A stretch of 64,000 nt of DNA from assembly GCF_037042905.1 (NCBI RefSeq), contig NC_087248.1:13578001-13642000 (forward strand), given 5' to 3'. Source of the DNA: Lytechinus pictus. Lineage: Eukaryota. This document shows positions 12,047-35,187 of this stretch, piece by piece. Numbering within the stretch: position 1 is the stretch's first letter; every line of letters begins with the position of its first letter. The notes below the pieces were generated by a model that did not search any database, was not told the DNA's origin, and was given only the letters and a program-made list of their open reading frames with translations. Made by a program: the position numbers and the translations under genes.

Positions 12047-12110
12047 GGGTGTGAAAAGAAGGTTTCGATTGGATCTCTGTGGAGAAGGGCCTATTTACAC
12101 AAGCAAGATG
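12047..12110 (+). other. Probable 5' exon of CNNM copy A whose last three bases are the start codon
   Basis: Polypyrimidine tract plus TAG acceptor at 12046, ending GCAAGATG|GTAAGC. The ATG splices in frame to GCA AAC ACA ATG at 14726. Confidence 0.6.
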
Positions 12111-14987
12111 GTAAGCAACACACTTCTCAAATTTTCAGAGTTTGATTGTCGGTAGTCATGCATTTTATACATTTTCTAAGCAATGCTTCATTAAACACTT
12201 GTATGCTTAAATCATTCCAATTTGCATTGATTTACTATAATTAAATCATTAAGAAAATCATACTATTTATACTTTTCTAATATTAGTTTTGGTTGATTGG
12301 TTTTATAGTAAAATGAGACAAAATTCTATGTTTTCCATATTAAGTATATTTATGCTGATATTATACAGGGACAGTACCAGGGTATTTGATCAGTCCCACA
12401 TTAGGGATTTTAGCCAGTTTTATCTTGATTATTAAATCATGTGAAATATAATTTTCATAGATGCTCACTTCATCATCTGAAATATATTTCCATGAAGTCT
12501 TAATGTAAAATATATTTCTCCTAGTCATGTGGATCCAAGGAGGGGACGTAGTGGTAGAGACCCCCCCCCCCTCCTCTAATGGCAGTGAAAAAACAAAGGA
12601 AATTATGAAGGAAAGAGAAAAAATAGAAGAAAATAAGGGAGGGGAGAAGATGGAAAAATGAATGAAACAAGAAGAGTGGATAATTAGAAAAAAGAAAGAT
12701 TTCAGCTCATTATGAAGGAAAAAATTCGCCTGCACTCACATTGTATGATGCATGGATGGAAATCTGAGGGGGGGGGGGACGCGTTTCCCCACTCTTTGGA
12801 AAGGGGGGGGGGGAGACACAGTATCAAATTCCCCCCCCCCCCCACACACACACATTATTTGTGGAAGGAGCACAAACAAGAAAGAAATGGGGAAGAAAGA
12901 AACAAATGAAAAAGAAGGAAAAGAGAGGAGAAAAAAGAGGAAAATAAGATCAGGATGGCGAGTGAATAAAAATTAGGTGAGGGAAATACATCTTTCATGT
13001 CACTACAGGTGTATATGAAATTTTTGCACGCTTCATGCTCGCATTGCCTGTTCTTTAAGATACATATCTTGCTCAATAGGCTGATATGAAGCTTAAAAAT
13101 ATCAAGTTTTGAAGTCAATAGACAAAACCGTTTTCGGACATCGAACTTTCATTATTTTGTTTGATTTAGAAATTGATTCAAAGAAGTGTTCTGTAAAATG
13201 TCAGTTTTTTGGTCTGAATAATTATCAGCATTTTCAGTGCGCGCTGCTCTAGCATTGTTTGATTTGTCAAGTACCTGTTTCCTTCGTAAGTTATCAACAT
13301 ATCTCTTTTTAGGTCTGATTGTGATGTATCAGCTAGTGCTGTGCGCTTGCATTTCAATTGGTGATTTATGTATACCTATAATTAGTAATTCTAACAAACT
13401 ACTTAAAAATCCCCCTTTCATGACAGTTTATAAAAAATGTCGGCTTGCGATTTGCGCGTGCATTATTTCAGTTAAAAATATATTAACCCATGTATGCTAT
13501 TCATAATTAAAAAAGTGCTTAAAACGTCCAGTTTTCTGGTCTTAATATCAACTTTTTTTCGCGCTCTCATTAGGCTTATTAGATTAATAAGTAAGATAGA
13601 ATAACATTTTCATGAATTCCTAATAATCAAATTGTGCCTTTTGTCAGAACGGAATATCGACAAGCTTCATCTCGCGCTTAGGAAGAGGAATAGAAAGATA
13701 TTTATAATTTTCATACGATGTGAATGTCCCATTCCTTGGTCAAAGTAATAATGAAAAAATACTAGCTCGCGCTTCGCGCTCGCATCATTTATTAATTGCG
13801 ATCCATATCCACTTCAGAATTTTCCTACTGAGTGCTGGAAATAGTGCTTAAATTCACCCTTTTTTGATAGGAATATCATTTTTTTGGGGGGGAGGGTGGG
13901 CTTAAAATGTCCAGGGGGGCTTAAAGGGGGCTTAAAATGTCCAGGTTTTAGGTCGGAATGTCTAAAATTTTCAGCTCGTGCTCCGCGTTCAGATTATTTA
14001 TTGAAATACATTATGTTGTATATTGGCCAATTTTTCAGCTCGGAATATAAACAATTTTCAGCTCGTGCTTTGCTTTTTTTGCGGCCGATTGCTTCTTGGG
14101 AAAAAGTGTTCCCGTCTTCATCAGTATTTTGAAGGACGTATAATGAAGGAGGATGATCATTGTGACCGCATTGTGTGAGATGAATGTATTTCACTGAATT
14201 CTTTCATATACAGTGTACTAGAAATTGATTGTGATGTTTGAAAAACCGCGGCAATGCAGTGATTATAAATTATTTTCCTTGTAAGCCCTTGTAAGTGTAA
14301 GGACAGAACGTTCTGAAAGGAAATATTAAATTCCATCAAAGGATAGCGGTTCAGGCAAATGGATCCAGGGCACATAAATCTGGTCTTTTTTTTAAAGATT
14401 TTTTTTTCTAAAAAAAAAGAAGATATTTTTCGTTAAAAAAGATGCCATTGTTACCAAAACAAAAATGTCAAGTGATAAATTAAAGAAATTTATTGATTGA
14501 AAAATTTTATCACACACACACATAAACATTACTACCAATTAAAATGACGTAATATGTTCTTTTCTTTTGGCAGATCACAGTTTGTCCAGCCCCCTTCCTT
14601 CCTGTTATAACTTATTATGGTTGTTAGTCCATAGTGTTGTCTGTGGTTTATTTTAGGGGTTTTTAATGTTTTGTTGTTGCTGTTTCATGAATCATGTAAA
14701 TTCATCCATAATCCCTTTTCATCAGGCAAACACAATGTTTATCAACTGCACGGTAGTCGATGATACCACAGTCCAATGCAATGGAACTGATTACCAGTTA
14801 CCCGAGGCGCCCATTGGACCTGATGAACCTCAGTTCTGGATCTACATAGGGGTCTACATCGCACTGATGCTCTTTGCCGGTGAGTGTCGGATGGGGTAGC
14901 CCGGGGGGGGGGGGGGCACGGAGGGGATGTGGTACCATGCAGCAGTATATTATCGGTCTACAGAGGTGGAGTGTATTCCCCCCCCCC

Positions 14988-15030
<43 letters not shown>

Positions 15031-18000: not shown

Positions 18001-21000
18001 CATACCAACAATATACGTCATAATAAAGACAACGCTGGATCAGTGCGCTTACAGTAACGTCACAATGGTAAAGTAATTGAAATGCGCAAAATTGCCGATG
18101 CAGAATCGGCTTTCTGTTTACACGTAGTAAAAAAGCCGATTCTGCATCGGCTCGCGGTTCAGAACCTACTACTTTGGTGGTGCAAATTGCCGGTTCTGAA
18201 CCGCGAGCCGATTCAAGTTGCTCGCGTTTACACGCTATGAAAAAGCCGATTCAAATGCCGATTAAGTGTAAACACGGTATAAGTGACTCAAAATTTTTGC
18301 TGGTGCCCCCCTCCCCCCAATGCCGTGACTCACGGTACGCCACTGCAAGAACACCATGCATATCAACCACTCACAAATGTCCTAACTTGTTATTTTAGTG
18401 GGGGTAATGTTGAAAGATCCCATCCACAAGAACATTTGTGTCAATCATCCCCCCCAACCAAGAATACCGAACGACACCCATGGTCTCCACGCAAAGACAC
18501 ATACAAAACTTGCTGTTTTAAGAGGGCCTTCAGTACACAAGGCATGAGTAGGCTGCAATTCAGACCCTTTACTCGAGTGAAGGGTTTGCACAGCAGACTA
18601 ATGTTCAGGTGCCATTATCCCAGACGAAGCTTTCGGCGATTCCGGGCGGCGATTACTTCCTGGTTAGATTGTTTCATTGGGTCAGATGCATAGAAAGTAG
18701 CAATTGCTTTTGCTAGGCTTTTGCTTGATTCCGTATGTAAATCAAATGAGCGAGAAAATTAATGCTTTGCCAAAAAGCGTAAGCATAAAGTGAACATTTA
18801 GCATTTGCTTGTGTTTTTCAAGCTCCGTCAGAGCAGCTTGAGCGTTTGCTTGATCAGGGGATTCGCGTTTTATAATCATGTTAATGCACCTGAGGGAGAA
18901 CTCCAAGGTGTACAGTAGCCTACAATACATGAATATATGTTTTTTTTCCTAGTAAGTGCAAAACCAAATACAAACTATATGAATTTCATTTAGAAACAAG
19001 TTAAGGGAATAGTTTGACACCAAGTCTAAGGAAAAGATGTTACATGGGAGGTGTATTTTGCACTGCCACACCTCTAGTATTCGAGTCCAGCATTTGTGTC
19101 GTGTTCGCACCAGGTGACGTCACTTTTATTGTTAAAACCGCTAGCAATTTTGCTCTCTGAAGGCAAGAAAAGGGTTTAAGCACAAGTAAAGGATTAGGCC
19201 GATGCATACGAAATAAAGCAATTGCTAATTCATGATCTTTTGCTTGGCTAGCAATTCCTTTCCAGCAATTGCTACTTTTTATGCATATCTGACTCATTAT
19301 CATGATTGTGCCTCCGTTTCATGGAAGAAAATTGGAAGCGCATCACCGTCGTTGTGATCTCCTATTTCCCAAATCCCATTTGTTTAAATGCAACAATGCC
19401 AAAATACATCATTAGCGCGGCCGTCTTGGGTGGGGGTGTCCTCCTAGAATTTCGAATTGTTTATGGAAACCAGTAGGAAAGTGTCCTCACACCCCATCCT
19501 GCCTTGATTAAAAAAAAATCGCTGCTCATGAAAGAAAAGATGACAAAAGCCTGAAATTTTTACGATCTTCAATATATGCCTCTACGTTTTAGTGATGGCA
19601 GAAGTCCGAATTCGACCAGACAATTTCTTCCCAAATTGCTTTTAGGTTTGATGGCTGGGTTGACCCTTGGTCTTTTGTCTCTGGACATCACTACTTTACA
19701 AGTTCTCTCGACGGCCGGCACCCCGAGTGAGCAGGTCTATGCCACCCGTATCCTTCCACTGGTCAAGAACTCGCATCTCCTTCTCGTCACTCTCATTCTT
19801 GCCAACGCCGCGGCCGTTGAGTCTATGCCCATCTTTCTCGATCACCTCACCAACCCGATCATCGCCGTCGTCGTATCCGTAACGGCGGTTCTCATTTTCG
19901 GAGAGTAAGTTTGTTGGACCTTCCTTTCACAAAATGCAGGAGTATGAATAATAAAAAAGAAATAAATGACATAGAATTTGTATAGTGCACGTACCCTCCT
20001 TGTTCGGTGCTCAAGGCGCTCCTAGTCTATACCGATTCCGGTTCTCACAGCCTTTCTAGGAATTACTTGCTGTCGGTACCCATTTACCTCACCTGGGTCT
20101 AGTGCAGTCGAATGTGGGTAAATTTCATGCTGAAGGAAACACGCCATAAAAAAATATGCTGGCTTGGAATCGAACTCGCGTCCCCCAGATTGAAAGACGA
20201 GAGTCTTAACCACGAGACCAAGACCACGACGCCCCACATGTATAATCATGTTCGGTGCCCTTTTAAGGGATTCAAGTTGTATTATTCAAACTCATTTTGC
20301 CCCCGGGCCGTCGTTGCGAGTCAATTAATTATAGCAAGGTTCGTGATGAAAAGCCACTTCTGGGAAAAGTCACTTTTGGGGCTTTCGCGCTCTGTTAATT
20401 CATTGAGAACTTCTTGAACCCTGTGCACCAGTCTTTTTCCATCATCAATCATACCTTCTTCCCCTATATACCCCCGCAAAATACTGTCTGACAGTCCTCC
20501 TATTTTTTCCTGGATTGGCAAAAAGCACTAAAGAAAAGAAATCAACACTCTACTGCTTCTGAACTAATAAATCCCATCATAACCATAGTTGTTACACTTT
20601 GTTTTTCCCCCTTTTTTTCCAAAAAGCAATGTACTTTTGATCTTTATCGAAGAGTTCTTTGAATGTATAGAGATGACGACTTAATTTATTCATATATTTT
20701 ACGATATGCAAGGGACTACGCATCCCAATGAACTTCTGACTGACTGCAATATTAAGCACTCTTTCCCATTGATACCTGCATCTTATCATTTTCTTTAGAA
20801 TCATTATCTTCCATATCATTTTCTTTATAGTCCTTATCTTTCATATTGAATAACTTATAGTTATTATATTTCATACTGTTTTCCCTTATTATATTGTTGT
20901 TTATTATATTCCTGTACAGAGTACTGCCGCAGTCTATATGCTCAAAATACGGATTGGCTATTGGAGCAAATATGGCATGGTATGTTCTATATCTACAAGG

Positions 21001-24000
21001 ATATGATTCTGACCTAGCATCGCATCGTGTGATGTTGACTATTAATTCTGAATTATTTGAGTCTAGCCCTATGTAAGGCGGTATACGAGCTTTCAAGTGT
21101 GCGTGGCGCTTAACCGAAATGGGCACTATTGTAGTCTAATTGTTATTTTTTAATTCTTAATTCCCTATCAAATTGTCTTTTTTTTCTTCGGTCTTCTTTT
21201 CTTACTTTTAATCAGTTTGAAAACCAAAGGAGAGTAAGCGGAACAACGTCATCTTCATACAATTATACCTGACAAACAGAGAGTGTTATTTTGCTCTCGC
21301 CCATGTTTTATAGAACTGATAAGTCTTGCCAGATGGTCTGACATCAATGACTGTTAAAAGAATGACAGCATGCAAGCCTTTTAAGATGTTTAAATCTAAA
21401 CGACTTGAATGCGGGGGCCTCACAAAATCACCTGTAAATCTTTACTCATTCAAGATCTGCGACATTTTCTAAAAATCTTTAAAGTCAATGTAATCGATCA
21501 AAAAACATTTTAATATTGAGCCATTTGACCAGCATCACTATTTGTTCCGTTTCTCTGTAGGTTTGTGTATATCCTCATTGCCCTAACCTTTGTTATTTCG
21601 TGGCCAATCGCCAAATTGCTGACTCTACTTCTAGGAGAAGGAACGGGGACCTTCTACCGGAGATCAGGTCTGTAGTTGTGCCCGGTTTTCACTTTCGTTT
21701 TATCATAATATTATGAAACCAAGAACATGTTTTTACCCTTTTACGATGTTATTAAAACATTAACAAAAAATCATCCGGCGAGACACGCGCAACGAAACTC
21801 CCTGCACTTCAGATGGAATACGGCATTGAATTGAGATCTCGTACATTGAGATATGGCTTTGATTTTTTTTCATGTTTAGAATATTGGTATCAACCGTTGC
21901 AAAAAAAAAACCCATACAAAAATCGCGATAGATAACGAATTTGTAAGAATGTTATTTGGAGGTTTGAATTCAACGGGACATCAGGCTGTAGTCACTGAAG
22001 TGGAAGTGGGCCCAAGTCAGGCGATGAGCTCACCATTCTCGTTTTCCTTGTTCTTTAAAATGTTGCTTAACCTTCTGGAAACCTTTGTGCTTACCTTGAA
22101 TGTTCGTGATCACCTACTGTTAAATTCTTATCAGGTTAAAAATATGCCCTCTATCAATTTTCTAAACAGAATTAAAAGCACTAATTGATATCCAGGCTAC
22201 CTCCCCCGACGCTGCTGCAGAGGATAGCGCCCTGACACAGGACGAAGTGCTGATCATCAAGGGTGCTCTAGATGCCGAGGGCAAGGTTGCTAGGGATGCT
22301 ATGATACCTCTTGATAAGACCTTCATGCTGGACCACTATGGTATACTTGATAGGAAGATCATGGAGCAGGTTGGGAATAAACGCATTTCACATTTATCGG
22401 GTTAAGAGGGTCTGTTTGGGGGTAAAGTTTGGTGGAATACCTAAGGTATTTACCTTTTGTGAAGGTGATGCGTCAAACTATCAATTCTAGTATAAATATG
22501 GATGTAGCTATCTTTCCGAAGAAAAATTGAGAAAAATAGCGTCATATCACGGATGAAGTAATGGTTCGTCTCATCCACTGAAACAAAACGGTGGTATTTG
22601 TTTTATATTCCACATCTGGTAATCCTTTAATAATTTAAAAGAAAGCAATGATGCCTACACTTAAATTGCAGGAGTGACGTATTTTTCTGAATTAAAATTT
22701 GAATTGTTAATGATTGACAATGCATGTATCTGCAGTTTATTTTGGAGAACTTAAATTATAAACGTTGCTTAATCTTCCAAATTGTGTTTAGCTCATGGCA
22801 AACGGATACTCGCACGTTCCCGTCTACAAAGACGACCGTAAGAACATCCTAGGGGAGTTTGTGGTCAAGAACCTTATCATCCTCGATCCAGATGATAACG
22901 AACCCATCGCGGCATCTCTCGAGAAATACGGTCGCCCCCTCCACTCCATAACGGCTACCAAGCCCCTGTATAACATTCTAGACGAGATGATGGATGGGAA
23001 ATATCGCATGGCGGCGATCTACGACACTCCGGCCATCTTGCCGACCATAGACGAGGCTGACAGTAACGCTCCAAGTACACCAACACTACCAACTACAACG
23101 TCACAGCCTGGAATGGTAGGAGATGTGTTTGGATAATTCGGAGTTGTTTATATACACCCGTAACTTTACTGGCCTGGAGGAGATATTGGTTGGTTTTGAT
23201 AGTTATGATGGCGTGATCGTGGCGGTGGTGATGATGGTGGTGGTTATGAAGATGGTGATGATAATTGTAATGCTTATAGTTGTGAAAGCGGTGATGATCA
23301 TCAACATCGTCATGATCTTGATCATGGTGATCATGATGATCATGCTGCTGCTGATGACGATGATGATTAAGATAATGGTATAAAACCCTTGAAGTAATAA
23401 AAGTAACATCCCTTATTTCGGCCAAAGAATTATTAAAGACGTCTGTTAATGGCGTAATATTCTAAGGGTTACACTTTAGTATTCCACTTGCTCTCATAGC
23501 CATCGTATTTGATAAGTCTATCTTAATAAAAAAAAGTTTGCAAATATCAATTCCCTAGGAAGTTATCAGGCTAGGTTGTTAAAAGGTCTTATTGCTGAGG
23601 ATTTGATGTTTCTGATCACGAACTTTGCAACTTTTTTTTGTCTCGAAGTTTGACGATATTGTTTGCTAATCTTCCTTGCTGTCACCGGTCAGATTTACGA
23701 CCGGAGTTACCGGAATGGCCAGCAAAATTCGCAAAGTTCGTGCGAACCGGTAACTCTACAGTAATATCATCGAATTCAGCGACAAATTTTGTTATAATGA
23801 CGTCTATATGAGTATGATCGATGACGATGACTTCAACGATGAAGTCGTACCTATCCTACCTATGTGATAAATTCTAGCGTCGTAAGCCCGTTCCTTCAGG
23901 CACGGCCATTGCATCCAATGGTGATAATTGCTCTTAATAACTGTTTCATCAACAGGACATTATCGGCTTCATCACGCTGTGGAATGTCCTGGAGGTGGTT

Positions 24001-24692
24001 CTGGGTGAGCCAATCATATCATCCGATGACGTCTACGCCAGTGTACGCCAGAAGGTCCAGATGGGTAAGGTTAAACTGGTCCGGTCACACAGCATGATTC
24101 CGGCTATCACGGCAAGCAATACAGGCTCCATCAACTCATTTCCACCTCCACTAACGGTAAGTATGGCATGTATGGTGTGGCAAACACCCGAGAAGTCGTT
24201 GGTGATAGACGGGTTGCAATGGTTACTATGGTGTTGATTGTAGTTTGATGGACATGATGCATTGGAGGGATTGTAATTTGAAGATGAGATTCGAAAAGGG
24301 TCTATGATCCTTGTAGTTTATAGAGACGACACTCCGAGTTGAATCAACATAAAAATCTAGTGACTCATTATTATAACAGGGAGGAATGATGGTACAATGA
24401 GAGAATGAGTAATAATACTTAGAACAGAAAACCCTTGATTGGTTGATGACGATGTTGCAGCCAGTGGCGAATTTAGAAGCTGCAATTATTCGGAGCGGAC
24501 AATTATTTACCGGCAGCGATTGCATGTTGAACCATGATAGTCCCTTTCCTACCATCTGCGTCTTTGATACTCCTCCTCTCTCTACATCTAATCCACCTAC
24601 TAACATGTCTTTTTCTAATCGTTTTTTTTTTGTAGCCCGAGCCGAATAGTGCAGAAAACACACCACTTCTGTCTTCAGGAAACATGGTCTGA
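12108..24692 (+). CDS. CNNM/DUF21 transmembrane + CBS-pair metal (Mg2+) transporter family protein, copy A, 454 aa, compact Mam3/CBSDUF-like architecture
   Basis: Exons 12108-12110 (ATG|GTAAGC, less certain), 14726-14879, 19646-19904, 20920-20979, 21561-21667, 22170-22369, 22792-23115, 23956-24156, 24636-24692 (TGA). Phases all join (1365 nt). Motifs: AGLMAGLTLGLLSLD, HLLLVTLILANAAA, LIFGEVLPQSIC, WPIAKLL, ELKALI, DEVLIIKGALD, GYSHVPVY, IGFITL. Confidence 0.92.
12760..14100. mobile_element. Older, decayed relative of the 16870-18345 hAT-like family
   Basis: Poly-G/poly-C head, a purine-rich tract, and repeated degenerate units (TTAAAATGTCC..GAATATC..TTTTCAGCTCGCGCTTCGCGCTCGCA) matching 17330-17830. 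Ends are not sharp. Confidence 0.55.
16870..18345. mobile_element. Non-autonomous hAT-like DNA transposon with 8-bp TSD
   Basis: TIRs CAGTGGCGTA / TACGCCACTG flanked by direct repeats CAAGAACA (16862-16869, 18346-18353). Internal repeats read TTTTCAGCTCGCGCTTCGCGCTCGCA. Confidence 0.85.
17866..18279. mobile_element. Foldback MITE (PIF/Harbinger-like) nested in the hAT-like element
   Basis: 28-bp TIRs TACCGTGTTTACACTTAATCGGCATTTG / CAAATGCCGATTAAGTGTAAACACGGTA with internal palindromes. The left end is partially duplicated at about 17847-17865. Confidence 0.8.
19965..20236 (-). mobile_element. tRNA-derived SINE (related family) in a CNNM copy A intron
   Basis: Minus strand: GGGCGTCGTGGTC..GTGGTTAAGACTC..GAGTTCGATTCC head and GACCCAGGTGAGGTAAATGGGTACC core. 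A degenerate plus-strand copy lies at about 33112-33290 and a tail-only fragment at about 15067-15165. Confidence 0.75.
23203..23378. repeat. Degenerate (GAT)n microsatellite
   Basis: Direct reading; explains the spurious His/Met-rich ORFs here. Confidence 0.85.
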
Positions 24693-25127
24693 TACGGCAG
24701 ACCGATCACCTCTCAATAATGGACTACCAGTACTAATCATGTCGAACATAGTAGAATGACAGTACTCCGGCCCTCATGGCTAGACCCATTTCTAAACGTT
24801 ACAACTAGTGATAAGCCGGGGCTATATAGGTTGCTCGATATGATTGATATCATAGGGGCATTACGTTTTTTGGACGGGTACATTCCCGAGAACGCTGAAT
24901 ACTGCTAGTATCAATAGGAACAGAACTGATCAACAACGTGCAGGCAGATTTGCATGCACTTCATACATTACCTGTATGTGCATGCTGACTGAATTCTGAG
25001 TTAAGCATTTAGCGTTCTTGCCTTTGGAACGCTTCCGTCCTTTAGCGTATAACATCGTAGAGGAGATATAAAAGAGATTAGTGAACAGTGATATTTATGT
25101 ATCGAATGTAATTTTATACTATATTAA

Positions 25128-25521
25128 AGAGAAATTCCAGTATTTGCAGTAAACACTGATTTCATGAGAAAGTCTGTAAAACAAGGCTTAATTGTCAGTA
25201 TATCATCGAGGATCTAGATCTGGTACAGTTACATAAACTGAACTTTGTGAAATCTTGAAATCTACGCTGAAAAATGTTCACACTGAAGATCACCAACACA
25301 GATAGGCACACGTGGGACACTGTATTATTATTGCTAAAATAAAGACCCGACGGAAGTGACCGAATCCGCGCTTATTTTGCTTATTTCTCAGCAATTACAC
25401 AATTTCTTCCAGAATCCTTTGGCACATATTTTTTATTCATACAAACAGACACTTAGGTGGTCATTATATTAGATTCTGTAAAAAGTCATTTTTAGATCGT
25501 TACCAAAACTGGAATTTATCT
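25128..25521. mobile_element. TTAA-target MITE (Kolobok-like) in the 3' region of CNNM copy A
   Basis: TIRs AGAGAAATTCCAGT / ACTGGAATTTATCT flanked by TTAA on both sides. Confidence 0.75.
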
Positions 25522-26594
25522 TTAAACGTAGTTGAATGAATCAAGGCTTCCATTGTACCAACAGGTGTACACACTAAAAGTCATCGTTTATATGTATAAG
25601 GTATGGATATTTGTTTTGGTTGTTGAAAGTATGCATAAGAACGTGTATGCCCTTTTCAATTGTTGACTAATGGTAACTGGAAGTAACTGACCAATATTGT
25701 TTGATTCAGGTGATTGGGATTTTATAATTTTTCGTTTAATTTGCTAATGAACTAGGAAAAATATTGTGAGAGTATTTTCCTGCTAGTAATTGAAAGTTCT
25801 CTCTTCCTTTAACCACTGAATCACTTTGTCGCTGATGAACCTCTTGAAGAAAGAGAGATTTCGGTCATCAAGAATAAACCATGAGTATCATGACTTTAAT
25901 ATCAAATGAAAAGTTTTAATTCAAATAAGAATCATTAAGACCATAAGCGAACAGGGAATTTGTTACGGGAAATATGTGACTTCATTATCTTTTCAAGATT
26001 CATCAATTAAATAATCACAACGTTAGGTCATCAAATTAAAAATCCTGTCAGAATAATGTACTTAATAGTTCAGGTGAATTAATTTTGGGAAGATATGGTT
26101 TCAAGTTATATTTTGAGATTTCGGGGATCATTAATATTTTCATAAATTCATAGACACACTTACATGCTTGAACATGACGGATGAAGTTAATCGTATTGTC
26201 TTTTTCATTTACACATATAATAAATTGAATCTTTGTTTAGAATTTTACCAAAATTTGTACATGCACACATATTTAATTTCCATGGTTCACCCACCATGCC
26301 CACCATGCCAAAATAAACGTAAATGCAAAACGTTCCCACAAAGGACTACATTGAGATGTCCTCGCTCTCTAGATCTTTGTTTGACTAAAGGTCAAGTGAA
26401 AGAATTCCGACTGTTTGTATATCGTGTTTGTACTTAGAGGTAAAGCTAGTCCTTCGGCTTTTAAGTCGCTCTTTGGAAAATTTATATTTATATTTAACAT
26501 GTTTAATGAGAATAGTGTAATGATTTAGCTTTACTGAAGTCACACAGTGCTATGCTACATTTTCAAAATGCCAGTCTCACAAACGGGCCAATAT

Positions 26595-26763
26595 CAGGGG
26601 CCACGGAACGGTTTTTCAAAGTGGGGGGGGGGGGGGGGGGGGGGGGCTGACCATGCAAAAAATCACAATCATATGGTAATTTTTACGTTTTTGTACATGG
26701 TTTTGGAAAAAAAGGGGGGGGGCTGAAGCCCCCCCCCCCCCCCCCCCGCTTCCGCGGCCCCTG
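26595..26763. mobile_element. Small poly-G/poly-C MITE
   Basis: TIRs CAGGGGCCACGGAA / TTCCGCGGCCCCTG with flanking AATAT direct repeat. A similar decayed element lies at about 36586-36859. Confidence 0.7.
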
Positions 26764-28665: not shown

Positions 28666-31600
28666 ATGGCAACAGCTGCCATGTCTTCATCTACTATAGA
28701 TCTCGGTAACGTGAGTGAGATCACGGAACATTCTGGAGAACCAACGTGCAATATTTCCGTTGTGCCGATTGCCCCTGTTGTTGAAGATCCCGATCAGGGA
28801 TGGTTCTGGGTGAATCTGATACTCTTCACCATCTTCACCTTTGGTTCTGGTAAGTGATTGGTAGAAAATACTCATTTATCATGCATGTTAATCTACATTC
28901 TGTTGGTCACTGCTGATCGGTGTCACATCTGTTCGGTATACAGTAGCAATTTCAAAATAAGAGAGTTCAATTGCTTGCATGGCTCACCATCGGTACCTTC
29001 AACTTAAATACTACTCAAAATCACGGTTTTATTAGGCATGAGACATGTTTAATCTTAAACAGTGTTAAAGGTGATGAAAATATCTACAACACTGTCGGTT
29101 TACCTTCCTTGTATATACGGTTCGTATATGGTCTTGGTATAAGGATGATTTGTTTAAATTTCACAGTGTCGTGACATAAATTAGTATTTGACCCATTTTA
29201 GGTGTGTGTTATTGTACCATTGAATCCGTTATGAATAGCCATGCTACAAATCTGAGGGGGGATACTACTTTAGAGTTTTTCTGTCATTTCTACTGCAGTA
29301 CAAAATTTAGGAAGAAATGGGAATTTGCTAACTTTCCTACCGCCCATCGTCAACAGTCTTCATGCTCATAGCGGCAATGCGTCCAGAATCATGAACAAAA
29401 CTACCGCTCTCTTAAAACCCAATCACTTATTTGCGTTCATTATACAGGTCTATACTCGGCCCTGACGACAAGTTTCTTTTCCCAGGACCTCACCAGGCTT
29501 GAGGTATGTCTTCGCCAGGGTACCCGAAGCGAAAAGGTCAACGCCTCCCGGGTCATGAGGCTTCTGAAGTACCCCAATTTACTGATTGTCACGCTCAACA
29601 TGGGTAACGTAGCCGCCATCGTGTGCCAGCCAATCGTCTTAGCCTACATTATTAGCCCGATACTGTCCGTTCTTGTTTCAGCAATAACTGTTTTCATCTT
29701 CAATAAGTAAGACATAGATCTTATCGTGCCATATTGTGTTTACCGGAGGCGGCGGCGTGACTCAAAGGAGAGTTGCCATAAAATCGGCAACACATATGAC
29801 ACAAGAAATCGAAAAAAGGCGATCTCGAATGGAATTGTTTTTTAAGTTATGAATGCCAGTTGCATTTGTCGGATACATTTAATAAGTCTGTTGTTTTGCT
29901 GCGAGTGAATAACTTGATTTCCATTATACATTGTCTTCTGAAAAGCAAAATTATCAAATCTAAATCTGAAAATTACCACCAATAATTGTAAAAATTAATA
30001 TAGTTGTAAACAGCATGATCCGTTAGAAATATTGCCGTGTAATGAAAATTATTTGGGTGTTCCTATTTCCTTTTTAATTCTTAGGTTATTACCTCAGCTC
30101 GTTGGTGATCGACATGGATTGGTTCTTGCCGCAAATATGGCATGGTAAGAATAAATTTATAAAAAATTAATTTGCCTATCTCCTAATTTGAATGTAAGCC
30201 TAAGGATCAATTTCACTTTACTGAAAAAAAAAGCTCAGTATCGATATGAAAATTTAATCTGATATATATTACCAAATACCCTCAACTTTTACGGGATGTG
30301 ACTATTAAAATTTAAACGATCCCGCGGTTAACGGACTCTCGTCGTCAAAACAATAAGGGGGGGGGGGGTTAGTTGATAACTATGAGTGGTTGACAAAATA
30401 ATGAAATGGTTCATATAATGTAGAAGAAATACAAAAAGGTGAATGTGGGCAAATGGGGAAGTCTTTCATTATCAGCTCTTAAACCAAGTAATTTTCGTCA
30501 AGATGGGAAGGCCATGTCCCCTTATCTACCCGCTCTTGCTATTTAATGTCCATTGATATTGCTGGTACCTATAACGTTGATGTTTTGTTTTGTTATCCTG
30601 TCTATCAACAACATTAGGTTTCTTATGTTACAAGTCTAGCTCATCTGGCTAATGTGAAAGAATAGTCATGATAGTTTTCGCCATAATCAGATAATGCAAT
30701 ACATAATGGTAACGTATGGATTCTTTCGTCTAGCAAAGATTAATAAGGTTTCATCAATTAGATTCAAAGAATGAAATTAGAACCTATCATGGAAACAATA
30801 AGCAAAATTATGCATGTAAGATATGATTAAATCTGTTAACAAAATATTTCAAAGAATGATTATTAATTAATTATTAATTGATTATTAATTTCTTCAATCA
30901 TTTCCAGGTTCGTTTATATATCAATTGCAGTGTTTTTCATCATAGCTTGGCCTGTTGCCATGCTGCTATCAGTGTTAATCGTGAAGAGGAAAGACAGATT
31001 TTACGAGCGAGCAGGTAAGAAAGAATTGGATTATCACAATGGATAGGAATATTAGCATAAATGAAGGTGTCCATCAAACTATTTTGGACCTGAACATGCA
31101 AAGACACATGTTATGGATATTTAGTACCTCCCTCAAAGAGTTGATATTGGCTTTTGCGTGATTAATGAGGAAAACTGCGTTTTATTCGTTATTAGTGAAT
31201 TGATATCGACTAAAATGGGGTTACAAGACAATTTATGATTAAAACAGAACGTTCCATGAGTCAAGAAAGTGCCGCCAAATGTATTCGTTAGAGACCGTCC
31301 GATGTTCCTCTTCCTCTTCTCTTCCTATTCAGCGTACCGCATGTAGGCATATATCCATCCGTATTCCATCGTTATTTCTGACATTGTAATTTTCATATAG
31401 TACAAAATCCATTTAGATACTCTGTAAAGAGTCACTGAGCCACTGTACCTCTGCTAAAAAAAAATTGATCGTGATAAAATTTTTAGTTCATATTCACATG
31501 GACATTAATCGTCTTTAGAAAGAAATTGAAGGACAAAACTCACTCAGTCTGTACCATAAAGATTAGGTGATAGGATCTACCCGGATTAGGTCCAATAGTT

Positions 31601-34600
31601 TGGAGGGCCTACCATCATTAACAAACTTACATCAGCGTTGCCATTTGGGGATTAGATGTCTATGGGAATGAAAAAAAAAATCTTTGGGGATTAAAGATAA
31701 ATTTGGGTTTTTATTTTCCATTTTAGGGGATTTTTGGTGACAAGCAATAACATTCGCATTTTTTCAATAATATAACGCTAATACTCAGATCTACTGTAAA
31801 GAGTTAATGTATAGAATCAGCAATAGTGGATAAAATCCACTATGACTTCAGCGCATGTCTTACGCAATTCAACCGATCAATTAAGTAAACTGAACTTAGT
31901 TGTTCGATACAATGGTACTGTTGCAATCTACATTGCATCGAAACCTACTAAAAAGAATTTAGTGTGAACAAACGAGCACACAATTACTAGTTAGGGGCAA
32001 TAACAAAAATAATGATTCATAAGTCTTCTTTTTCAGAAATTATAGTGATTTGAAAAGGTGGGAATTTTTGGTCCAATTTTGAGATTTTTTCAAGTACCTT
32101 TTGGTGATTTCTTCAGCGTGGACCTGGCCTGGCAACACTGACTTACATTGCTCCCGAAATGGTTTCATATCTATTTTGGCTGACGAAGAATGGGAGCCTA
32201 CTCCTTAATTGAAGTACCTAATTAGAGATGATGCTAAAGTCGGGGACGTCATTTTGGAACACAAGATCATATAGACACGAGTACCATATACAAGAATCGA
32301 ACACTCATTAAAAACAAAATGTGTCGAGTAGAACCTTTCTTTGTCCCGTACATCGAACATTTTAAGGTTCTTCAGAGAAGAAGAAAGAAGTTTTAAACAG
32401 TCCTTTGAGCACTTTTGGCTCTGCAAAGAATCCTTTAAGGTTCTTATACATCCTATGGAGTTCTTGGTGGTGTAAAAAGCTCCATAGGATGTATACAGAA
32501 CCTTATACAAAATTGGTGGGGGTCTTCACACTATCAAGATCCCCTTACGATGTTGAACATTAACGTGATAGAAGGGTTCCTTGGAGAACCTTAAAAGGTT
32601 CCACATACGGGACAAAGAAATGTTCTAAAATCTTTTAGAGTGAATATTTATATCTTCAGAACTCAAGGCCCTGATAGAGCTCCAGATGACATCACCAGAC
32701 GCTGCAGCTGAACAGCATACCCTGACATATGACGAAGTTCACATTATCAAGGGAGCATTGGATGCTGAGAGTAAGGTTGCCATGGACGCCATGATACCAC
32801 TGGATAACGTTAGCATGTTGGACTATGATGGGGTTTTTGACAGGAAGACTATGCAGTTGGTAGGTAAATTGTGCAAGGTTTGTAGTGGTGAGGAAGGTAG
32901 GTGATGGCGGCAGTAGAGTGCATTTGTAACGGTTGGGGATAACTTTGTTGATAGTTTCGATGATGGGGGATGAAAATAGGTGAGTTGTGTGGGGATGTGC
33001 GTGTGTGTGCGTTTGCTTCTGTGATTGCGTGGGTGTGCTTGATTGTAGGTGTGTTTATGTATGTGTGTGTGTTGATCTGGCAAAGTGTAGACGTGTATCA
33101 AGTGACGTGTTGGGAGGTGTCGTGGCCGAGTGGTCATGGCGACTGACTACATAATGAGAGAGACCAGAGTCTAATTCCGTGCACAGCCCATGAGCAAGGA
33201 ATTTTATCTACATTGCTATTGTATCTCGCAGCAAGTAAATGGAATACTATGCATTACTGATACCAGCGTCGCGACGCGTAAGTGATAGAGAATGGAGATC
33301 AGAGAGTTTATGAAAAAAATATGTCGCACTGTCCATGCTGACGATGTTTGTTGGGAGTAACCACTAGGACTGACGTTTTCTTGATTTTTACTTGTTATAG
33401 AAGAAGTTTGTGGTGATTGGAAGGTTTCGTAACGATGTATTGAAAATTATTATTACTAGAAAGTCACTATAGTAATTGTTGATGTCACTTGCCTCAAATG
33501 CCATGCCTGCAACAACCTTTCAAAAATCACTTTCATTTCAGTGGCAGCTCGACAGAGTGTTTTCAACAAGCATTATATTAATAATACCAGCATAATCAAA
33601 ATGACAAATTTTACCAAATGTCGTTGATTCTTTGTTGTCCATTCTCCTACTTCAGTAGCTTGCTACACAGAAATTCTCGCACGTTCCAGTCTATAAGAAC
33701 CACCGTAAAAACGTCCAAGGCGAGTTTGTGATCAAGGAACTAATTCTCCTCGACCCCGAAGACCAAGAGCTAATCTCTACGTCGTTCAACAGATTCGGTC
33801 GTTCTCTCCATTTCATTCCGTCAAGTAGACCTCTATATGATATATTCGATGATATGAACCTTGGGCGTTACCGAATAGCTGCCGTGCTTGATGATGACAC
33901 AGAGGTAAGTTTTCAAGACCTGAGGCTCATTTCATAAAACTAAAACAAATTTTAAATAACAGTTAAACGCTAATAAAGCCATTCAATTTGATTGGCTGAA
34001 AGTAAACTCGTTATAGACATTGGCCATTTGCTATTGTTAAAAGTCTTTATGAAACGAGTGCCCGTTTCACATAGAATTAAAATATTTTAATGCTAGGAGT
34101 CCACTTGGGCAGCGCCAGTTCGCTCCCAAAGGAAAGCGGTTGTGGCGCGTTGTTTCGCCAATAACGTGCCTATTGGCGTGCCAAATTCAATTGGTGCTGT
34201 TACGAGTAATCCGGCACTCGTCAGTTGGAGGCAAATTGAGTCACTGCACGCCAATAGGCACCTTATTGGCGACACTAGGCGCCACAGCCGCTTTGCATTG
34301 ACGGAACCTTTATGTTTTGAAAAGGGGGACATAGTCTACTGATAAGACTGGATACCACTTGGGGGCTCCCATCTCTGCCTGTCTTCAATGATCCTTCTAC
34401 CCCTCTCACTTCATCTCTCTTCTCCTTTATCGTTCTCTCCATCTATCTTATTCTTTCCCAATTTTCCTCTGTCTTTCTGCTTTAAGCCCCCTTCTGCTCA
34501 GTGACCTGATTGACTACAGCGTGATTCGCTTTACCCATCGATCCAGTCCTGTATCATTTTGAAACGCTTGAAAGTGGCAATCTTGTTCTCCATCCTTTCA

Positions 34601-35187
34601 TGCTCTTCCCCATCCTTTCATGCTCTTCCCCTTTTCCAGGTTGTTATCGGATTCCTAACGCTACAGAACGTCTTGGATGTGATTCTAGGTCAAACTCGAG
34701 CCCTTAGTCGACGGGACTCATCTGGTACGATGAAGATGGTCCAGTCTGGATTACAACTTGCCATGGAACGCCGGAGGTCCCTTCACGCTAGCAATACCCT
34801 TGTTTCTGAAGGAGTAAGATATTTTCTAGAGAATTCGTAGAGTCATTCGTGGTCTTATTAGTCATCTTGTTGTGGGTAATGTGATGGCGGCGGTGGGGGG
34901 TTTTGGGCAGATGAAGTCCATATACATGATATAATTGCCCTTCCTAGAAACAGTTTAAGACATGTTAGACTGCGAATTATATTCCTATATGCTTTCGTCA
35001 ACTTAGCTTTGTCAAATTACAAATCTTGGGAATGGGCTATGTGGAATGAATGCTTGTTGCGTCTTAAAAAAATAAAGACTTGCCTCATGTTACTGACAGG
35101 ATAGGAGCCTTAGATTTATTTCTTTTTGTTCTTCAACAGAATCATCGACCTACTGAAATTACCCCTTTGATCAAAGAAGTTTCATGA
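28666..35187 (+). CDS. CNNM/DUF21 + CBS-pair family protein, copy B (tandem paralog), 425 aa, degenerate ion-binding motif
   Basis: Exons 28666-28849, 29448-29706, 30085-30144, 30908-31014, 32660-32859, 33659-33904, 34640-34813, 35140-35187 (TGA), 1278 nt in frame. Internal exon sizes 259/60/107/200 are identical to copy A. Motifs: SGLYSALTTSFFSQD, LLIVTLNMGNVAA, LLPQ..GLVLAANMAW, WPVAMLL, ELKALI, DEVHIIKGALDAE, FSHVPVYK. Confidence 0.88.
32302..32642. mobile_element. CACTA/EnSpm-like non-autonomous element in CNNM copy B intron 4
   Basis: CACTC.. / ..TTTTAGAGTG termini, AA 2-bp flanks, and many AGAACC/GGTTCT subterminal repeats. Confidence 0.6.

What the first reader, a model, noticed from the sequence alone, without database searches (positions are those of the whole stretch)
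12108..35187. Tandem pair of compact, fungal/plant-style CNNM genes: candidate organellar Mg2+ transporter plus pseudo-transporter partner
Seen: two adjacent same-strand genes with matching intron positions encode a short N-tail with N-glycosylation sequons (NCT, NGT; NVS, NIS), no obvious signal peptide, then DUF21, a CBS pair and a short tail (454 and 425 aa). Established: vertebrate CNNM1-4 also carry an extracellular Ig-like domain and a C-terminal CNBH domain, while yeast Mam3 and plant CBSDUF/MGR proteins lack them and several are vacuolar. CNNM/CorB proteins work as dimers. Inference: this is a little-studied second animal CNNM lineage. Copy A keeps the ion site, while copy B is an intact but site-dead paralog that could heterodimerise to tune transport. 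If the host is an echinoderm, vesicular Mg2+ handling may matter for high-Mg calcite skeletons (speculative).
Basis: partly seen in the sequence, partly recalled or inferred. Interest (0 to 1): 0.8.

Follow-up and report, generated by a model that had tools for sequence, protein, structure and literature searches.

The report
Sea-urchin short CNNM gene pair
Two neighbouring sea-urchin genes encode short, yeast/plant-style relatives of the CNNM magnesium transporters; one looks like a working transporter, while the other belongs to an old urchin-only branch that keeps the fold but has replaced the acidic residues that hold the magnesium ion.

Summary
Gene A (12108-24692) and gene B (28666-35187) lie on the + strand and share seven intron positions and phases. 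They encode 454 and 425 aa, identical to NCBI's Lytechinus pictus models LOC129258981 and LOC129258417. Each has a short N-glycosylated tail, a DUF21 membrane domain and a CBS pair, with no Ig or CNBH domain. Complete cDNA contigs from other urchins show the same.

Trees put both genes outside canonical CNNM (100/100). They fall in an animal Mam3/MGR-like group found from sponges to tunicates, which NCBI names "DUF21 ... At4g33700-like". A 2024 paper already lists it as a gene lost in vertebrates.

New here: A and B come from an urchin-specific duplication. The B type is also present in Diadema, and this genome has a third, unlinked copy, C. All B-type proteins replace the invariant Gly-Glu with Asn-Lys and lose two more membrane acidic residues. 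They remain under purifying selection (dN/dS about 0.12-0.16) and fold confidently like CorB. A keeps Glu but lacks both TM1 serines. A and B both have an altered ATP site.

Heterodimer modelling gave only weak support, and three RNA-seq runs show A without B. Other notes from this scan on the same window had already flagged the NK change and the last-exon motif.

The parts
12108..12110 (+). Gene A: start codon on an upstream mini-exon. The ATG is directly followed by a GTAAGC donor. The 5' UTR extent was not mapped.
   Evidence: Sequence. The NCBI model XP_054753220.2 begins MANT.
14726..14879 (+). Gene A exon: N-glycosylated luminal tail (NCT, NGT, two Cys) and the start of TM1. It ends in phase 1.
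   Evidence: The N-tail Cys...CNGT.Y motif is conserved across the animal family.
19646..19904 (+). Gene A exon: DUF21 TM1-TM3. It contains FAGLMAGLT (Ala at both TM1 serine sites), LANAAAVE, and Gly 19900-19902. The Glu codon is split by the intron (19903-19904 plus 20920).
   Evidence: Pfam CNNM E 1.4e-7 on the exon alone. Alignment to the CNNM4 structure, residues 199-283..
20920..20979 (+). Gene A exon: the rest of TM3, with the pi-helix motif E-V-L-P-Q.
21561..21667 (+). Gene A exon: juxtamembrane helix.
22170..22369 (+). Gene A exon: helical bundle region and the start of CBS1.
   Evidence: It is 69% identical to the matching B exon.
22792..23115 (+). Gene A exon: CBS1 end (G-Y-S-H-V-P-V-Y, His in place of the phosphate-binding Arg), CBS2 start, and a Pro/Thr-rich insert.
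23956..24156 (+). Gene A exon: CBS2 end (T-L-W-N in place of T-L-E-D) and the tail.
   Evidence: RNA-seq depth 1-3 with the first mate on the - strand.
24636..24692 (+). Gene A last coding exon with the acidic dileucine motif E-N-T-P-L-L (24654-24671) and the stop codon.
   Evidence: The 24156|24636 junction is read by 6 reads in X19 and 1 in X20. The motif [DE]xxPL[LI] is conserved across the animal family.
25124..25525 (.). A 402-bp MITE (21-nt terminal inverted repeats, TTAA at both ends) downstream of A's stop codon, in the likely 3' UTR. It is not part of the genes' function.
28666..28849 (+). Gene B exon 1: start codon, tail with NVS and NIS (one Cys only), and the start of TM1.
   Evidence: The model equals XP_054752670.2.
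29448..29706 (+). Gene B exon 2: DUF21 TM1-TM3. It contains GSGLYSALT (both serines kept), N-V-A-A-I-V (the TM2 Glu replaced by Val), and Asn 29702-29704. The Lys codon is split by the intron (29705-29706 plus 30085).
   Evidence: Pfam CNNM E 3.4e-8.. A contig in run X1 begins at the acceptor.
30085..30144 (+). Gene B exon 3: the rest of TM3 (K-L-L-P-Q).
30908..31014 (+). Gene B exon 4: juxtamembrane helix.
32660..32859 (+). Gene B exon 5: helical bundle and the start of CBS1.
33659..33904 (+). Gene B exon 6: CBS1 end and CBS2 start. Its acceptor is a CAGTAG tandem.
34640..34813 (+). Gene B exon 7: CBS2 end (T-L-Q-N) and a basic tail.
35140..35187 (+). Gene B last exon with E-I-T-P-L-I (35155-35172) and the stop codon.

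Best explanation
A and B are tandem paralogs of the animal Mam3/MGR-type DUF21-CBS proteins. These are 'short CNNMs': a luminal glycosylated N-tail, three TM helices plus a juxtamembrane helix, a CBS pair and a C-terminal [DE]xxPL[LI] motif.

Shown:
- The gene models, the architecture and the fold.
- Placement outside canonical CNNM.
- An echinoid-specific duplication into an A type and a B type.
- Conservation of the tandem pair in Lytechinus variegatus and Strongylocentrotus purpuratus.
- Purifying selection on both genes.
- Transcription and splicing of A in this species.

Inferred:
- A is a divalent-cation (most likely Mg2+) exchanger. It keeps the invariant Glu, the pi-helix Pro and the TM2 Asn.
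- A sits on endolysosomal or vesicular membranes and moves Mg2+ out of the cytosol into the lumen. This follows from yeast Mam3 and Arabidopsis MGR1 at the vacuole and from the conserved adaptor-type dileucine signal.
- B cannot bind Mg2+ in the family's way. Gly-Glu is Asn-Lys, the TM2 Glu is Val and a nearby Asp is Ala, which removes three acidic residues and puts a Lys at the ion site. The same is true of the unlinked copy C and the Diadema gene.
- B nevertheless keeps the whole fold under selection, so it most likely has a transport-independent or changed role as a regulator or sensor built on the CNNM scaffold. It probably acts on its own schedule rather than as an obligate partner of A. 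Mixed A:B dimers remain possible wherever both are expressed.
- The Mg-ATP switch of the CBS pair was remodelled in the urchin stem lineage, before the duplication.
For: Gene models and annotation:
- The models are identical to the NCBI proteins.
- Pfam finds CNNM plus a weak CBS match only, while the canonical L. pictus CNNM2-like protein and a frog CNNM2 show CNBH (the frog also Ig).
- A matches the CNNM4 structure residues 182-522 at E 4.5e-57.
- The AF2 model of B has mean pLDDT 80, and block means are mostly above 90 in the TMD and the CBS pair. Its best PDB matches are MtCorB (E 1.9e-17) and the CNNM2 CBS pair (TM 0.90, 1.8 A).

Phylogeny:
- Canonical CNNM clade 100/100.
- The animal short-CNNM group is one side of a branch, at 99/99 and 99/92.
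- Echinoid clade 100/100, and B-type clade 100/100 with the topology (Diadema,(C,B)).

Ion site:
- MtCorB binds Mg2+ through Ser21, Ser25, Ser71, Gly110 and Glu111, with Glu111 invariant from archaea to humans. CNNM2 E357K is a disease allele of that Glu (PMC8242095).
- GE occurs in 340 of 354 family sequences. NK occurs only in the 5 echinoid B-type proteins in that set. S. purpuratus B also has NK.
- Of 111 columns at least 93% conserved in 105 non-echinoid members, A differs at 18 and B at 57. N134, K135 and V107 are fixed in all B-type sequences.

Selection and synteny:
- dN/dS (NG86) is 0.05-0.19 for A and 0.12-0.16 for B.
- The tandem pair is also present in L. variegatus and S. purpuratus.

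Expression:
- A's last junction is read in stranded RNA-seq.
- Full-length B-type and A-type cDNA contigs exist in other urchins.
- A contig in X1 starts at B's exon-2 acceptor. B exon-sized word shares are held by runs of two studies.

Function of relatives:
- MGR1 and Mam3 are at the tonoplast, and MGR1 rescues the Mg content of mam3 yeast (PMC9804957).
Against: - No transport, localisation or binding data exist for any animal member.
- A lacks both TM1 serine hydroxyls that coordinate Mg2+ in MtCorB, so its substrate or affinity may differ. Position 196 is Ala in the whole animal group; position 200 is Ala in urchin A and in amphioxus.
- The ATP-site changes (Arg to His, Asp to Asn, Thr to Ile) could disable regulation in A as well.
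- The dileucine motif is degenerate in strongylocentrotid B (L-Y, L-F).
- A Lys in a cation site sometimes replaces a co-ion rather than abolishing transport.
- The trees contain no fungal Mam3, and only one long-branch land-plant sequence in the first tree. 'Mam3/MGR-type' therefore rests on architecture, on NCBI's best-hit names and on the literature.
Confidence: 0.55

Rival explanations
1. One reading: B is a dedicated pseudo-transporter subunit that forms A:B heterodimers to tune A's Mg2+ transport.
For: - CNNM/CorB proteins work as dimers through TM2/TM3 and the CBS pair (PMC8242095).
- The tandem arrangement has been kept in three urchin species.
- Run X1 holds parts of both genes.
- Complex prediction for A(30-415) with B(40-400) gave weak support: score 0.54, best control 0.13. 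The mark was reached by 51 of 78 solved complexes and 2 of 108 mismatched pairs. At 0.60 or under it was reached by only 5 of those 78 solved complexes and by all 4 mismatches that passed. The runs agree in at least 79% of contacts, and the partner's pLDDT is at least 72.
Against: - That test does not tell which member of a dimeric family binds, and close cousins pass it.
- In three stranded RNA-seq runs A is read and B exons 1-2 have zero reads.
- The best holders of A (X1-X4) and of B (X22-X24) within the same study are mostly different samples.
- Copy C is 6.3 Mb away.
- The Diadema B-type gene has no A-type gene within 10 kb, and no Diadema A type appeared among the hits.
Confidence: 0.25
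2. B-type proteins still transport, but something else or in another mode. The Lys amine would take the place of the bound cation, and the changed cavity would give a new substrate or uncoupled exchange.
For: - Fold and selection are retained.
- Both TM1 serines, the TM2 Asn (kept in all B-type rows except C) and the pi-helix Pro-Gln are kept in B.
- The substitutions are fixed rather than scattered across the B-type clade.
- From general knowledge, basic residues replace a cation in some sodium-independent relatives of sodium-coupled carriers.
Against: - Three acidic cavity residues are lost together.
- Copy C has also lost much of CBS1.
- The equivalent human change, E357K, is described as a charge-reversal disease allele of the Mg2+-coordinating Glu (PMC8242095).
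Confidence: 0.15
3. B is a decaying duplicate on its way to becoming a pseudogene.
For: B has many substitutions at conserved positions (57 of 111), and no reads in three RNA-seq runs.
Against: - The reading frame is intact, with all splice sites, in L. pictus, L. variegatus, S. purpuratus, a further strongylocentrotid cDNA and two Diadema species.
- dN/dS is 0.12-0.16.
- The derived residues are fixed across the clade.
- The AF2 fold is confident.
- A full-length spliced cDNA contig exists.
Confidence: 0.03
4. Both are ordinary CNNM1-4-type genes whose Ig and CNBH exons were missed.
For: None found.
Against: - The canonical CNNM2-like gene lies on another contig (C12) and carries CNBH.
- The trees separate the two groups at 100/100.
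- The cDNA contigs have upstream in-frame stops and 3' UTRs directly after the short ORFs.
- A's terminal junction and 3' UTR are read in RNA-seq.
Confidence: 0.01

Closest known systems
Yeast Mam3 and Arabidopsis MGR1/CST2 (vacuolar Mg2+ sequestration; PMC9804957)
   Same: DUF21 plus CBS pair without Ig or CNBH domains. The TM2 motif N-A-x-A-x-E and the G-E-x-x-P-Q motif are shared with algal and protist members. NCBI names the urchin proteins after Arabidopsis DUF21 genes.
   Different: - The animal proteins form their own group in my trees.
- No fungal sequence was included.
- Localisation and transport are untested in any animal.
- The animal members have a conserved Cys...CNGT.Y luminal tail and a C-terminal [DE]xxPL[LI] motif.
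Canonical metazoan CNNM1-4 / Drosophila UEX
   Same: The same TMD and CBS-pair core (E 4.5e-57 to the CNNM4 structure), and the same Gly-Glu, Pro and Asn site in copy A.
   Different: - No extracellular Ig-like domain and no CNBH domain.
- A separate clade at 100/100.
- The urchin has its own canonical CNNM2-like gene on contig C12.
'DUF21' Cnidaria-and-Bilateria regeneration gene (PMC11077316, Genome Biol Evol 2024)
   Same: By its description and distribution (kept in cnidarians, planarians, starfish and Ciona, with paralogs only in low-regeneration species) it is the same animal short-CNNM lineage.
   Different: - That paper treats it as an uncharacterised transmembrane protein.
- It reports lethal RNAi in amputated planarians.
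- It does not describe the echinoid duplication or the NK-type clade.
- I did not check sequence identity with their planarian gene.
Human CNNM2 p.Glu357Lys (hypomagnesaemia allele)
   Same: The same residue and the same substitution as in the B-type proteins: the invariant Mg2+-coordinating Glu becomes Lys.
   Different: In urchins the change is fixed, comes with further cavity changes (Gly to Asn, Glu to Val, Asp to Ala/Asn), and has been kept under purifying selection in a separate paralog while a Glu-bearing copy remains.
Archaeal MtCorB / bacterial TpCorC (solved structures)
   Same: The best full-length structural match of the B model (7m1t, E 1.9e-17). The topology is the same, and the site residues can be mapped by alignment.
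   Different: No CorC/HlyC C-terminal domain; about 17% identity; and the ATP-contact residues Arg235 and Asp316 are His and Asn in both urchin copies.

Membership tests
CNNM/CorB superfamily (DUF21-CBS) | DUF21/CNNM transmembrane domain (PF01595) | tested here: met
   A 95 bits and B-type (L. variegatus orthologue, 97% identical) 74 bits against a cut-off of 28.4. Single exons also pass. The genome-wide scan finds 4 loci.
CNNM/CorB superfamily (DUF21-CBS) | Cytosolic CBS pair after the TMD | tested here: met
   The Pfam CBS match is below cut-off (17-22 bits against 24). However, A matches the sequences of CNNM2/3/4 CBS-pair crystal structures at E 1e-16 to 1e-21. The CBS pair of the B model superposes on the zebrafish CNNM2 CBS pair at TM 0.90 and 1.8 A.
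CNNM/CorB superfamily (DUF21-CBS) | Invariant Mg2+-coordinating Glu in the TM3 pi-helix (G-E-x-x-P) | tested here: inconclusive
   Met in A (G-E-V-L-P-Q). Not met in B (N-K-L-L-P-Q) or in any B-type protein. B is therefore a member by fold and descent, but not by active site.
CNNM/CorB superfamily (DUF21-CBS) | TM1 serines and TM2 Asn/Ser of the Mg2+ site (MtCorB S21, S25, S71) | tested here: inconclusive
   A has Ala, Ala, Asn. B has Ser, Ser, Asn. The mapping goes through the CNNM4 S196/S200 equivalence stated in PMC8242095.
CNNM/CorB superfamily (DUF21-CBS) | Mg-ATP contacts in the CBS pair (MtCorB T207, S234, R235, T313, D316) | tested here: not met
   By alignment, both A and B have Ile, Ser, His, Thr, Asn, so 3 of the 5 polar contacts are changed. 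The Arg-to-His and Asp-to-Asn changes are shared by all echinoid copies. Binding itself was not testable.
CNNM/CorB superfamily (DUF21-CBS) | Homodimer | not testable with these tools
   Only an A:B model was run, and it gave weak support.
Canonical animal CNNM1-4/UEX | Extracellular Ig-like domain (PF25511) and C-terminal CNBH domain (PF25562) | tested here: not met
   Both are absent from A, B, C and Diadema. CNBH is present in the L. pictus CNNM2-like protein, and both are present in a frog CNNM2. The cDNA contigs are complete.
Canonical animal CNNM1-4/UEX | Placement inside the CNNM1-4 clade | tested here: not met
   The canonical clade has 100/100 support on a branch of 1.3-1.5 and excludes A and B.
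Mam3/MGR-type short CNNM | Architecture: short N-tail, DUF21, CBS pair, no further domains | tested here: met
Mam3/MGR-type short CNNM | Grouping with fungal Mam3 and plant MGR rather than with canonical CNNM | tested here: inconclusive
   The animal group is separated from a set that holds green algae, protists and canonical CNNM (99/99, 99/92). No fungal Mam3 could be obtained, and one land-plant row sat on a long branch.
Mam3/MGR-type short CNNM | Vacuolar or endolysosomal localisation and Mg2+ sequestration | not testable with these tools
   The only indirect evidence is the conserved C-terminal [DE]xxPL[LI] motif.

The most novel reading that the evidence does not exclude
The echinoid B/C/Diadema clade is a natural, long-lived 'E357K-type' CNNM-fold protein. 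It has been kept under selection since before the split of diadematoid and camarodont urchins, which I place from general knowledge at roughly 200 million years or more. That would show that the DUF21-CBS scaffold has a function independent of carrying Mg2+, for example sensing, regulating another channel or transporter, or damping vesicular Mg2+ loading as a mixed dimer. This bears on the old dispute over whether CNNMs are transporters or regulators.
Probability: 0.3. Interest if true: 0.7.

Novelty: new variant of a known kind. Interest (0 to 1): 0.5.

Why it matters
The CNNM field has long argued over whether these proteins carry Mg2+ themselves or regulate other channels. Here one organism holds three things side by side: a canonical CNNM, a short Mam3-like copy with the ion-binding Glu, and two fold-intact copies in which that Glu is Lys, the same change as a human disease allele. 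The Lys copies have been kept by selection across distant urchins. Lytechinus pictus is a laboratory species with genetic tools, so transport-dependent and transport-independent roles can be separated directly.

The work also documents that invertebrate animals keep a yeast/plant-style Mg2+ transporter that vertebrates lack, and that nobody has yet localised or assayed.

Tried and rejected
- My first gene models ended in the long open frames of the second-last exons (481 and 418 aa). I corrected them after finding the tiny last exons.
- The Rfam scan of 12000-36000 found nothing.
- Pseudogene status for B is rejected.
- Truncated canonical CNNM is rejected.
- I looked for a named fungal Mam3 among 20 long representatives. 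They were only algae, amoebae, a stramenopile and Corallochytrium, so fungi are missing from the trees.
- I looked for papers naming the urchin accession or LOC numbers and found none. A search combining sea urchin with DUF21, CNNM and magnesium listed no paper that mentions sea urchins.
- No Diadema A-type gene was found among the hits or within 10 kb of the B-type gene. Absence is not shown.
- The ML dN/dS estimate for B against cDNA L006 gave an odd dS (0.27), so I used the NG86 values.
- Because codon pairs were taken from tblastn pieces, some piece ends read into introns and slightly inflate the differences.
- The Mg-calcite link has no evidence for it, and the distribution of the family argues against a specific tie.
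Full report
**What is in the sequence.** The stretch is AT-rich animal DNA with short exons. By translating the three + frames and comparing the two halves, I found seven colinear exon pairs and fixed their borders on GT-AG sites. The motifs ENTPLL and EITPLI sit behind good acceptors, and matching donors exist in the previous exons.

The final models give 450 aa for A counted from the Met at 14735, or 454 aa with an upstream mini-exon whose ATG (12108-12110) is directly followed by a donor. B gives 425 aa. The seven shared introns have the same phases, and four consecutive exons have the same lengths (259, 60, 107, 200 nt). The codon of the critical Glu (A) or Lys (B) is split by the same phase-2 intron.

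**Whose genes they are.** A search with A's DUF21 exon against 1.8 billion representative proteins returned a 455-aa Strongylocentrotus purpuratus protein at 95% identity over the exon. Word-based searches and cluster look-ups then gave the names.
- My B model is identical to Lytechinus pictus XP_054752670.2 (LOC129258417).
- My A model is identical to XP_054753220.2 (LOC129258981) from residue 5.
- The record's contig length equals that of the window's contig.

The genome is therefore L. pictus. NCBI calls the proteins 'uncharacterized' there, and 'DUF21 domain-containing protein At2g14520/At4g33700/At5g52790-like' in L. variegatus and S. purpuratus.

**Architecture and fold.** Pfam finds the CNNM (DUF21) domain and a sub-threshold CBS match in A, B, the third copy C and the Diadema protein. 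It finds no Ig_CNNM4_N or CNBH_CNNM2_C domain in any of them. In the same call the canonical L. pictus CNNM2-like protein shows CNBH, and a frog CNNM2 shows both domains.
- A aligns to the CNNM4 structure over residues 182-522 (E 4.5e-57) and to many CNNM CBS-pair crystal structures.
- An AlphaFold2 model of the B type (L. variegatus orthologue, 97% identical, 51-row alignment) has mean pLDDT 80, and block means are mostly above 90 through the membrane domain and the CBS pair.
- Its best solved matches are archaeal MtCorB over the whole core (E 1.9e-17) and the CNNM2 CBS pair (TM 0.90, 1.8 A).
- Two Logan contigs from other urchins are spliced cDNAs with complete ORFs of 424 aa (B type) and 465 aa (A type). 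Both have in-frame stops upstream and a 3' UTR downstream.

No hidden Ig or CNBH exons exist.

**Phylogeny.** The genome has four DUF21 loci: a canonical CNNM on contig C12, A, B, and one more on the same contig as the window, 6.3 Mb away. I built two maximum-likelihood trees with 43 and 47 proteins. The rows were canonical CNNMs of urchins, a starfish, a hemichordate, amphioxus, Ciona and vertebrates; short CNNMs from sponges to tunicates; green algae; protists; and Corallochytrium.
- Canonical CNNM is a clade at 100/100 on a long branch.
- The animal short CNNMs are one side of a branch at 99/99 and 99/92.
- All urchin short CNNMs form a clade at 100/100.
- Inside it, the A type (98/86, 99/93) is sister to a B-type clade (100/100) with the order (Diadema,(C,B)).

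It is not new to databases, though. Hits cover sponges, cnidarians, molluscs, annelids, a nemertean, a brachiopod, a horseshoe crab, echinoderms, hemichordates, amphioxus and tunicates. PMC11077316 lists 'DUF21' among genes kept in highly regenerative animals and reports high mortality after RNAi in amputated planarians. My trees lack fungal Mam3, because none could be identified among the named representatives.

**The ion site and other conserved positions.** In MtCorB the Mg2+ is held by Ser21, Ser25, Ser71, the Gly110 carbonyl and Glu111. Glu111, Ile112 and Pro114 are invariant from archaea to humans. CNNM2 E357K reverses the charge of that Glu, and CNNM4 S196 and S200 line the cavity (PMC8242095).
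- Among 354 family sequences collected here, 340 have Gly-Glu. Asn-Lys occurs only in the five echinoid B-type proteins in that set, and S. purpuratus B has it too.
- I took the 111 alignment columns that are at least 93% conserved in 105 non-echinoid animal members. A differs at 18 of them and B at 57.
- The B-type clade has fixed Asn-Lys for Gly-Glu and Val for the TM2 Glu of the N-A-A-A-V-E motif. It has Ala or Asn for a following Asp. It keeps the Pro-Gln of the pi-helix, both TM1 serines and, except in copy C, the TM2 Asn.
- A keeps the acidic residues but has Ala at both serine positions.
- Both types share changes that must predate the duplication. The phosphate-binding Arg (MtCorB Arg235) is His, the ribose-binding Asp (Asp316) is Asn, and Thr207 is Ile. 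The acidic run E-E-I-x-D-E-T-D after CBS2 is largely lost.

So 'A keeps the site, B is dead' is a fair first approximation. But A is itself a derived member, and B's change is a coordinated remodelling of the cavity rather than one lesion.

**Selection, synteny and the third copy.**
- The A-then-B tandem is present in L. variegatus and S. purpuratus. A lebercilin-like gene lies upstream on the other strand in S. purpuratus and in the window.
- Pairwise dN/dS (NG86) is 0.19, 0.09 and 0.05 for A. It is 0.16, 0.12 and 0.12 for B. The comparisons are against L. variegatus, S. purpuratus and the cDNA contigs.
- Copy C (G000:C4, about 7274176-7284908) has the same exon plan and Asn-Lys. It also has a long Asn-Ser-Thr-rich N-terminal extension and a degenerate CBS1, and is 88-100% identical exon by exon to its L. 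variegatus orthologue.
- The Diadema setosum B-type gene has no second DUF21 gene within 10 kb.

B is not a pseudogene.

**Expression.** I laid reads on 23900-29800, which covers A's last two exons and B's first two.
- In three stranded RNA-seq runs of this species, A's exon is covered at depth 1-3.
- The 24156|24636 junction is read 6 times in X19 and once in X20.
- Signal continues into a 3' UTR.
- All pairs have the first mate on the - strand, as expected for a + strand RNA.
- B's exons 1 and 2 have no reads in these runs.
- In a contig-only run (X1), one contig begins exactly at B's exon-2 acceptor.

Word shares fit exon-only content for A in X1-X4 and X15-X18 (0.27-0.35). They reach or approach it for B in X22-X24 (0.18-0.20) and X39 (0.40), with 0.13 in X1. 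Both genes are therefore transcribed, their best samples differ, and at least one sample holds both. Cell-level co-expression could not be tested.

**Heterodimer test.** One complex prediction of A(30-415) with B(40-400) gave 'weak support'.
- The score was 0.54 against a best control of 0.13.
- The mark was reached by 51 of 78 solved complexes and 2 of 108 mismatched pairs.
- At 0.60 or under, it was reached by only 5 of those 78 solved complexes and by all 4 mismatches that passed.
- The runs agree in at least 79% of contacts, and the partner's pLDDT is at least 72.

The tool itself warns that close family members pass regardless of which one truly binds. This moves my odds very little.

**How it most likely works.** Shown: descent, architecture, fold, conserved and lost residues, selection and transcription. 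The rest is inferred, by homology and retained residues.
- A is a Mg2+ (divalent cation) exchanger.
- Mam3 and MGR1 sit at the vacuole (PMC9804957), and the animal family conserves a C-terminal [DE]xxPL[LI] motif. From general knowledge, that motif is the form recognised by clathrin adaptors for endosome and lysosome sorting. A therefore probably sits on endolysosomal or vesicular membranes and loads Mg2+ into the lumen.
- The motif is weaker in strongylocentrotid B (L-Y, L-F).
- B-type proteins cannot coordinate Mg2+ as the family does, and they probably serve a regulatory, sensing or altered-transport role.
- I rate an obligate A:B partnership at about 0.25.
- The high-Mg calcite idea is not supported by anything seen. 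The family occurs in many non-calcifying animals, and the starfish and crinoid hits are ordinary GE-type proteins.

**Novelty.** Gene A is a new, already annotated member of a known kind. The charge-inverted B/C/Diadema clade and the stem remodelling of the ATP site appear undescribed, since no paper in the library links urchins with DUF21 or CNNM. I class the whole as a new variant of a known kind, of moderate interest.

Noticed in passing
window 25124-25525: A 402-bp element with 21-nt terminal inverted repeats and TTAA at both ends, so a MITE, possibly of piggyBac type. The first look found about 2,900 candidates in this genome, and the 40 that were scored are 99-100% identical. It is heavily covered on both strands in RNA-seq. 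It lies downstream of gene A's stop codon, probably within its 3' UTR.
   Followed up: partly
G000:C4:7274176-7284908 (L004, L010, L011): A third short-CNNM paralog (LOC129258497, 487-491 aa), 6.3 Mb from the pair. It has Asn-Lys at the ion site, a long Asn-Ser-Thr-rich N-terminal extension with many sequons, and a degenerate CBS1. It is conserved in L. variegatus.
   Followed up: partly
window 33650-33660: The acceptor of B's sixth exon is a CAGTAG tandem after a phase-0 intron, so use of the upstream AG would insert an in-frame TAG. The tandem is shared with L. variegatus but not with S. purpuratus or Diadema. Its use in RNA was not tested.
   Followed up: partly
window 7564-8082, - strand: An exon of a lebercilin-like ciliary protein gene (Pfam PF15619, E 4.5e-38). 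The same neighbour lies upstream of the S. purpuratus pair, so synteny extends beyond the two genes.
   Followed up: partly
window 48676-50760, - strand: A 694-aa single-exon open frame with RING and B-box zinc fingers (TRIM-like).
   Followed up: no
window 12500-12980, 14880-15100, 15760-15840, 16850-17000, 26550-26850: Several short stretches rich in G or C runs give Gly- or Pro-run open frames on both strands, in A's first introns and between the genes. They are probably copies of one repeat family.
   Followed up: no
G000:C12:625110-628622 (L001): The canonical CNNM2-like gene of this genome has one large first coding exon of 466 aa. It covers the extracellular region, DUF21 and part of the CBS pair, unlike the finely split short CNNMs.
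   Followed up: partly
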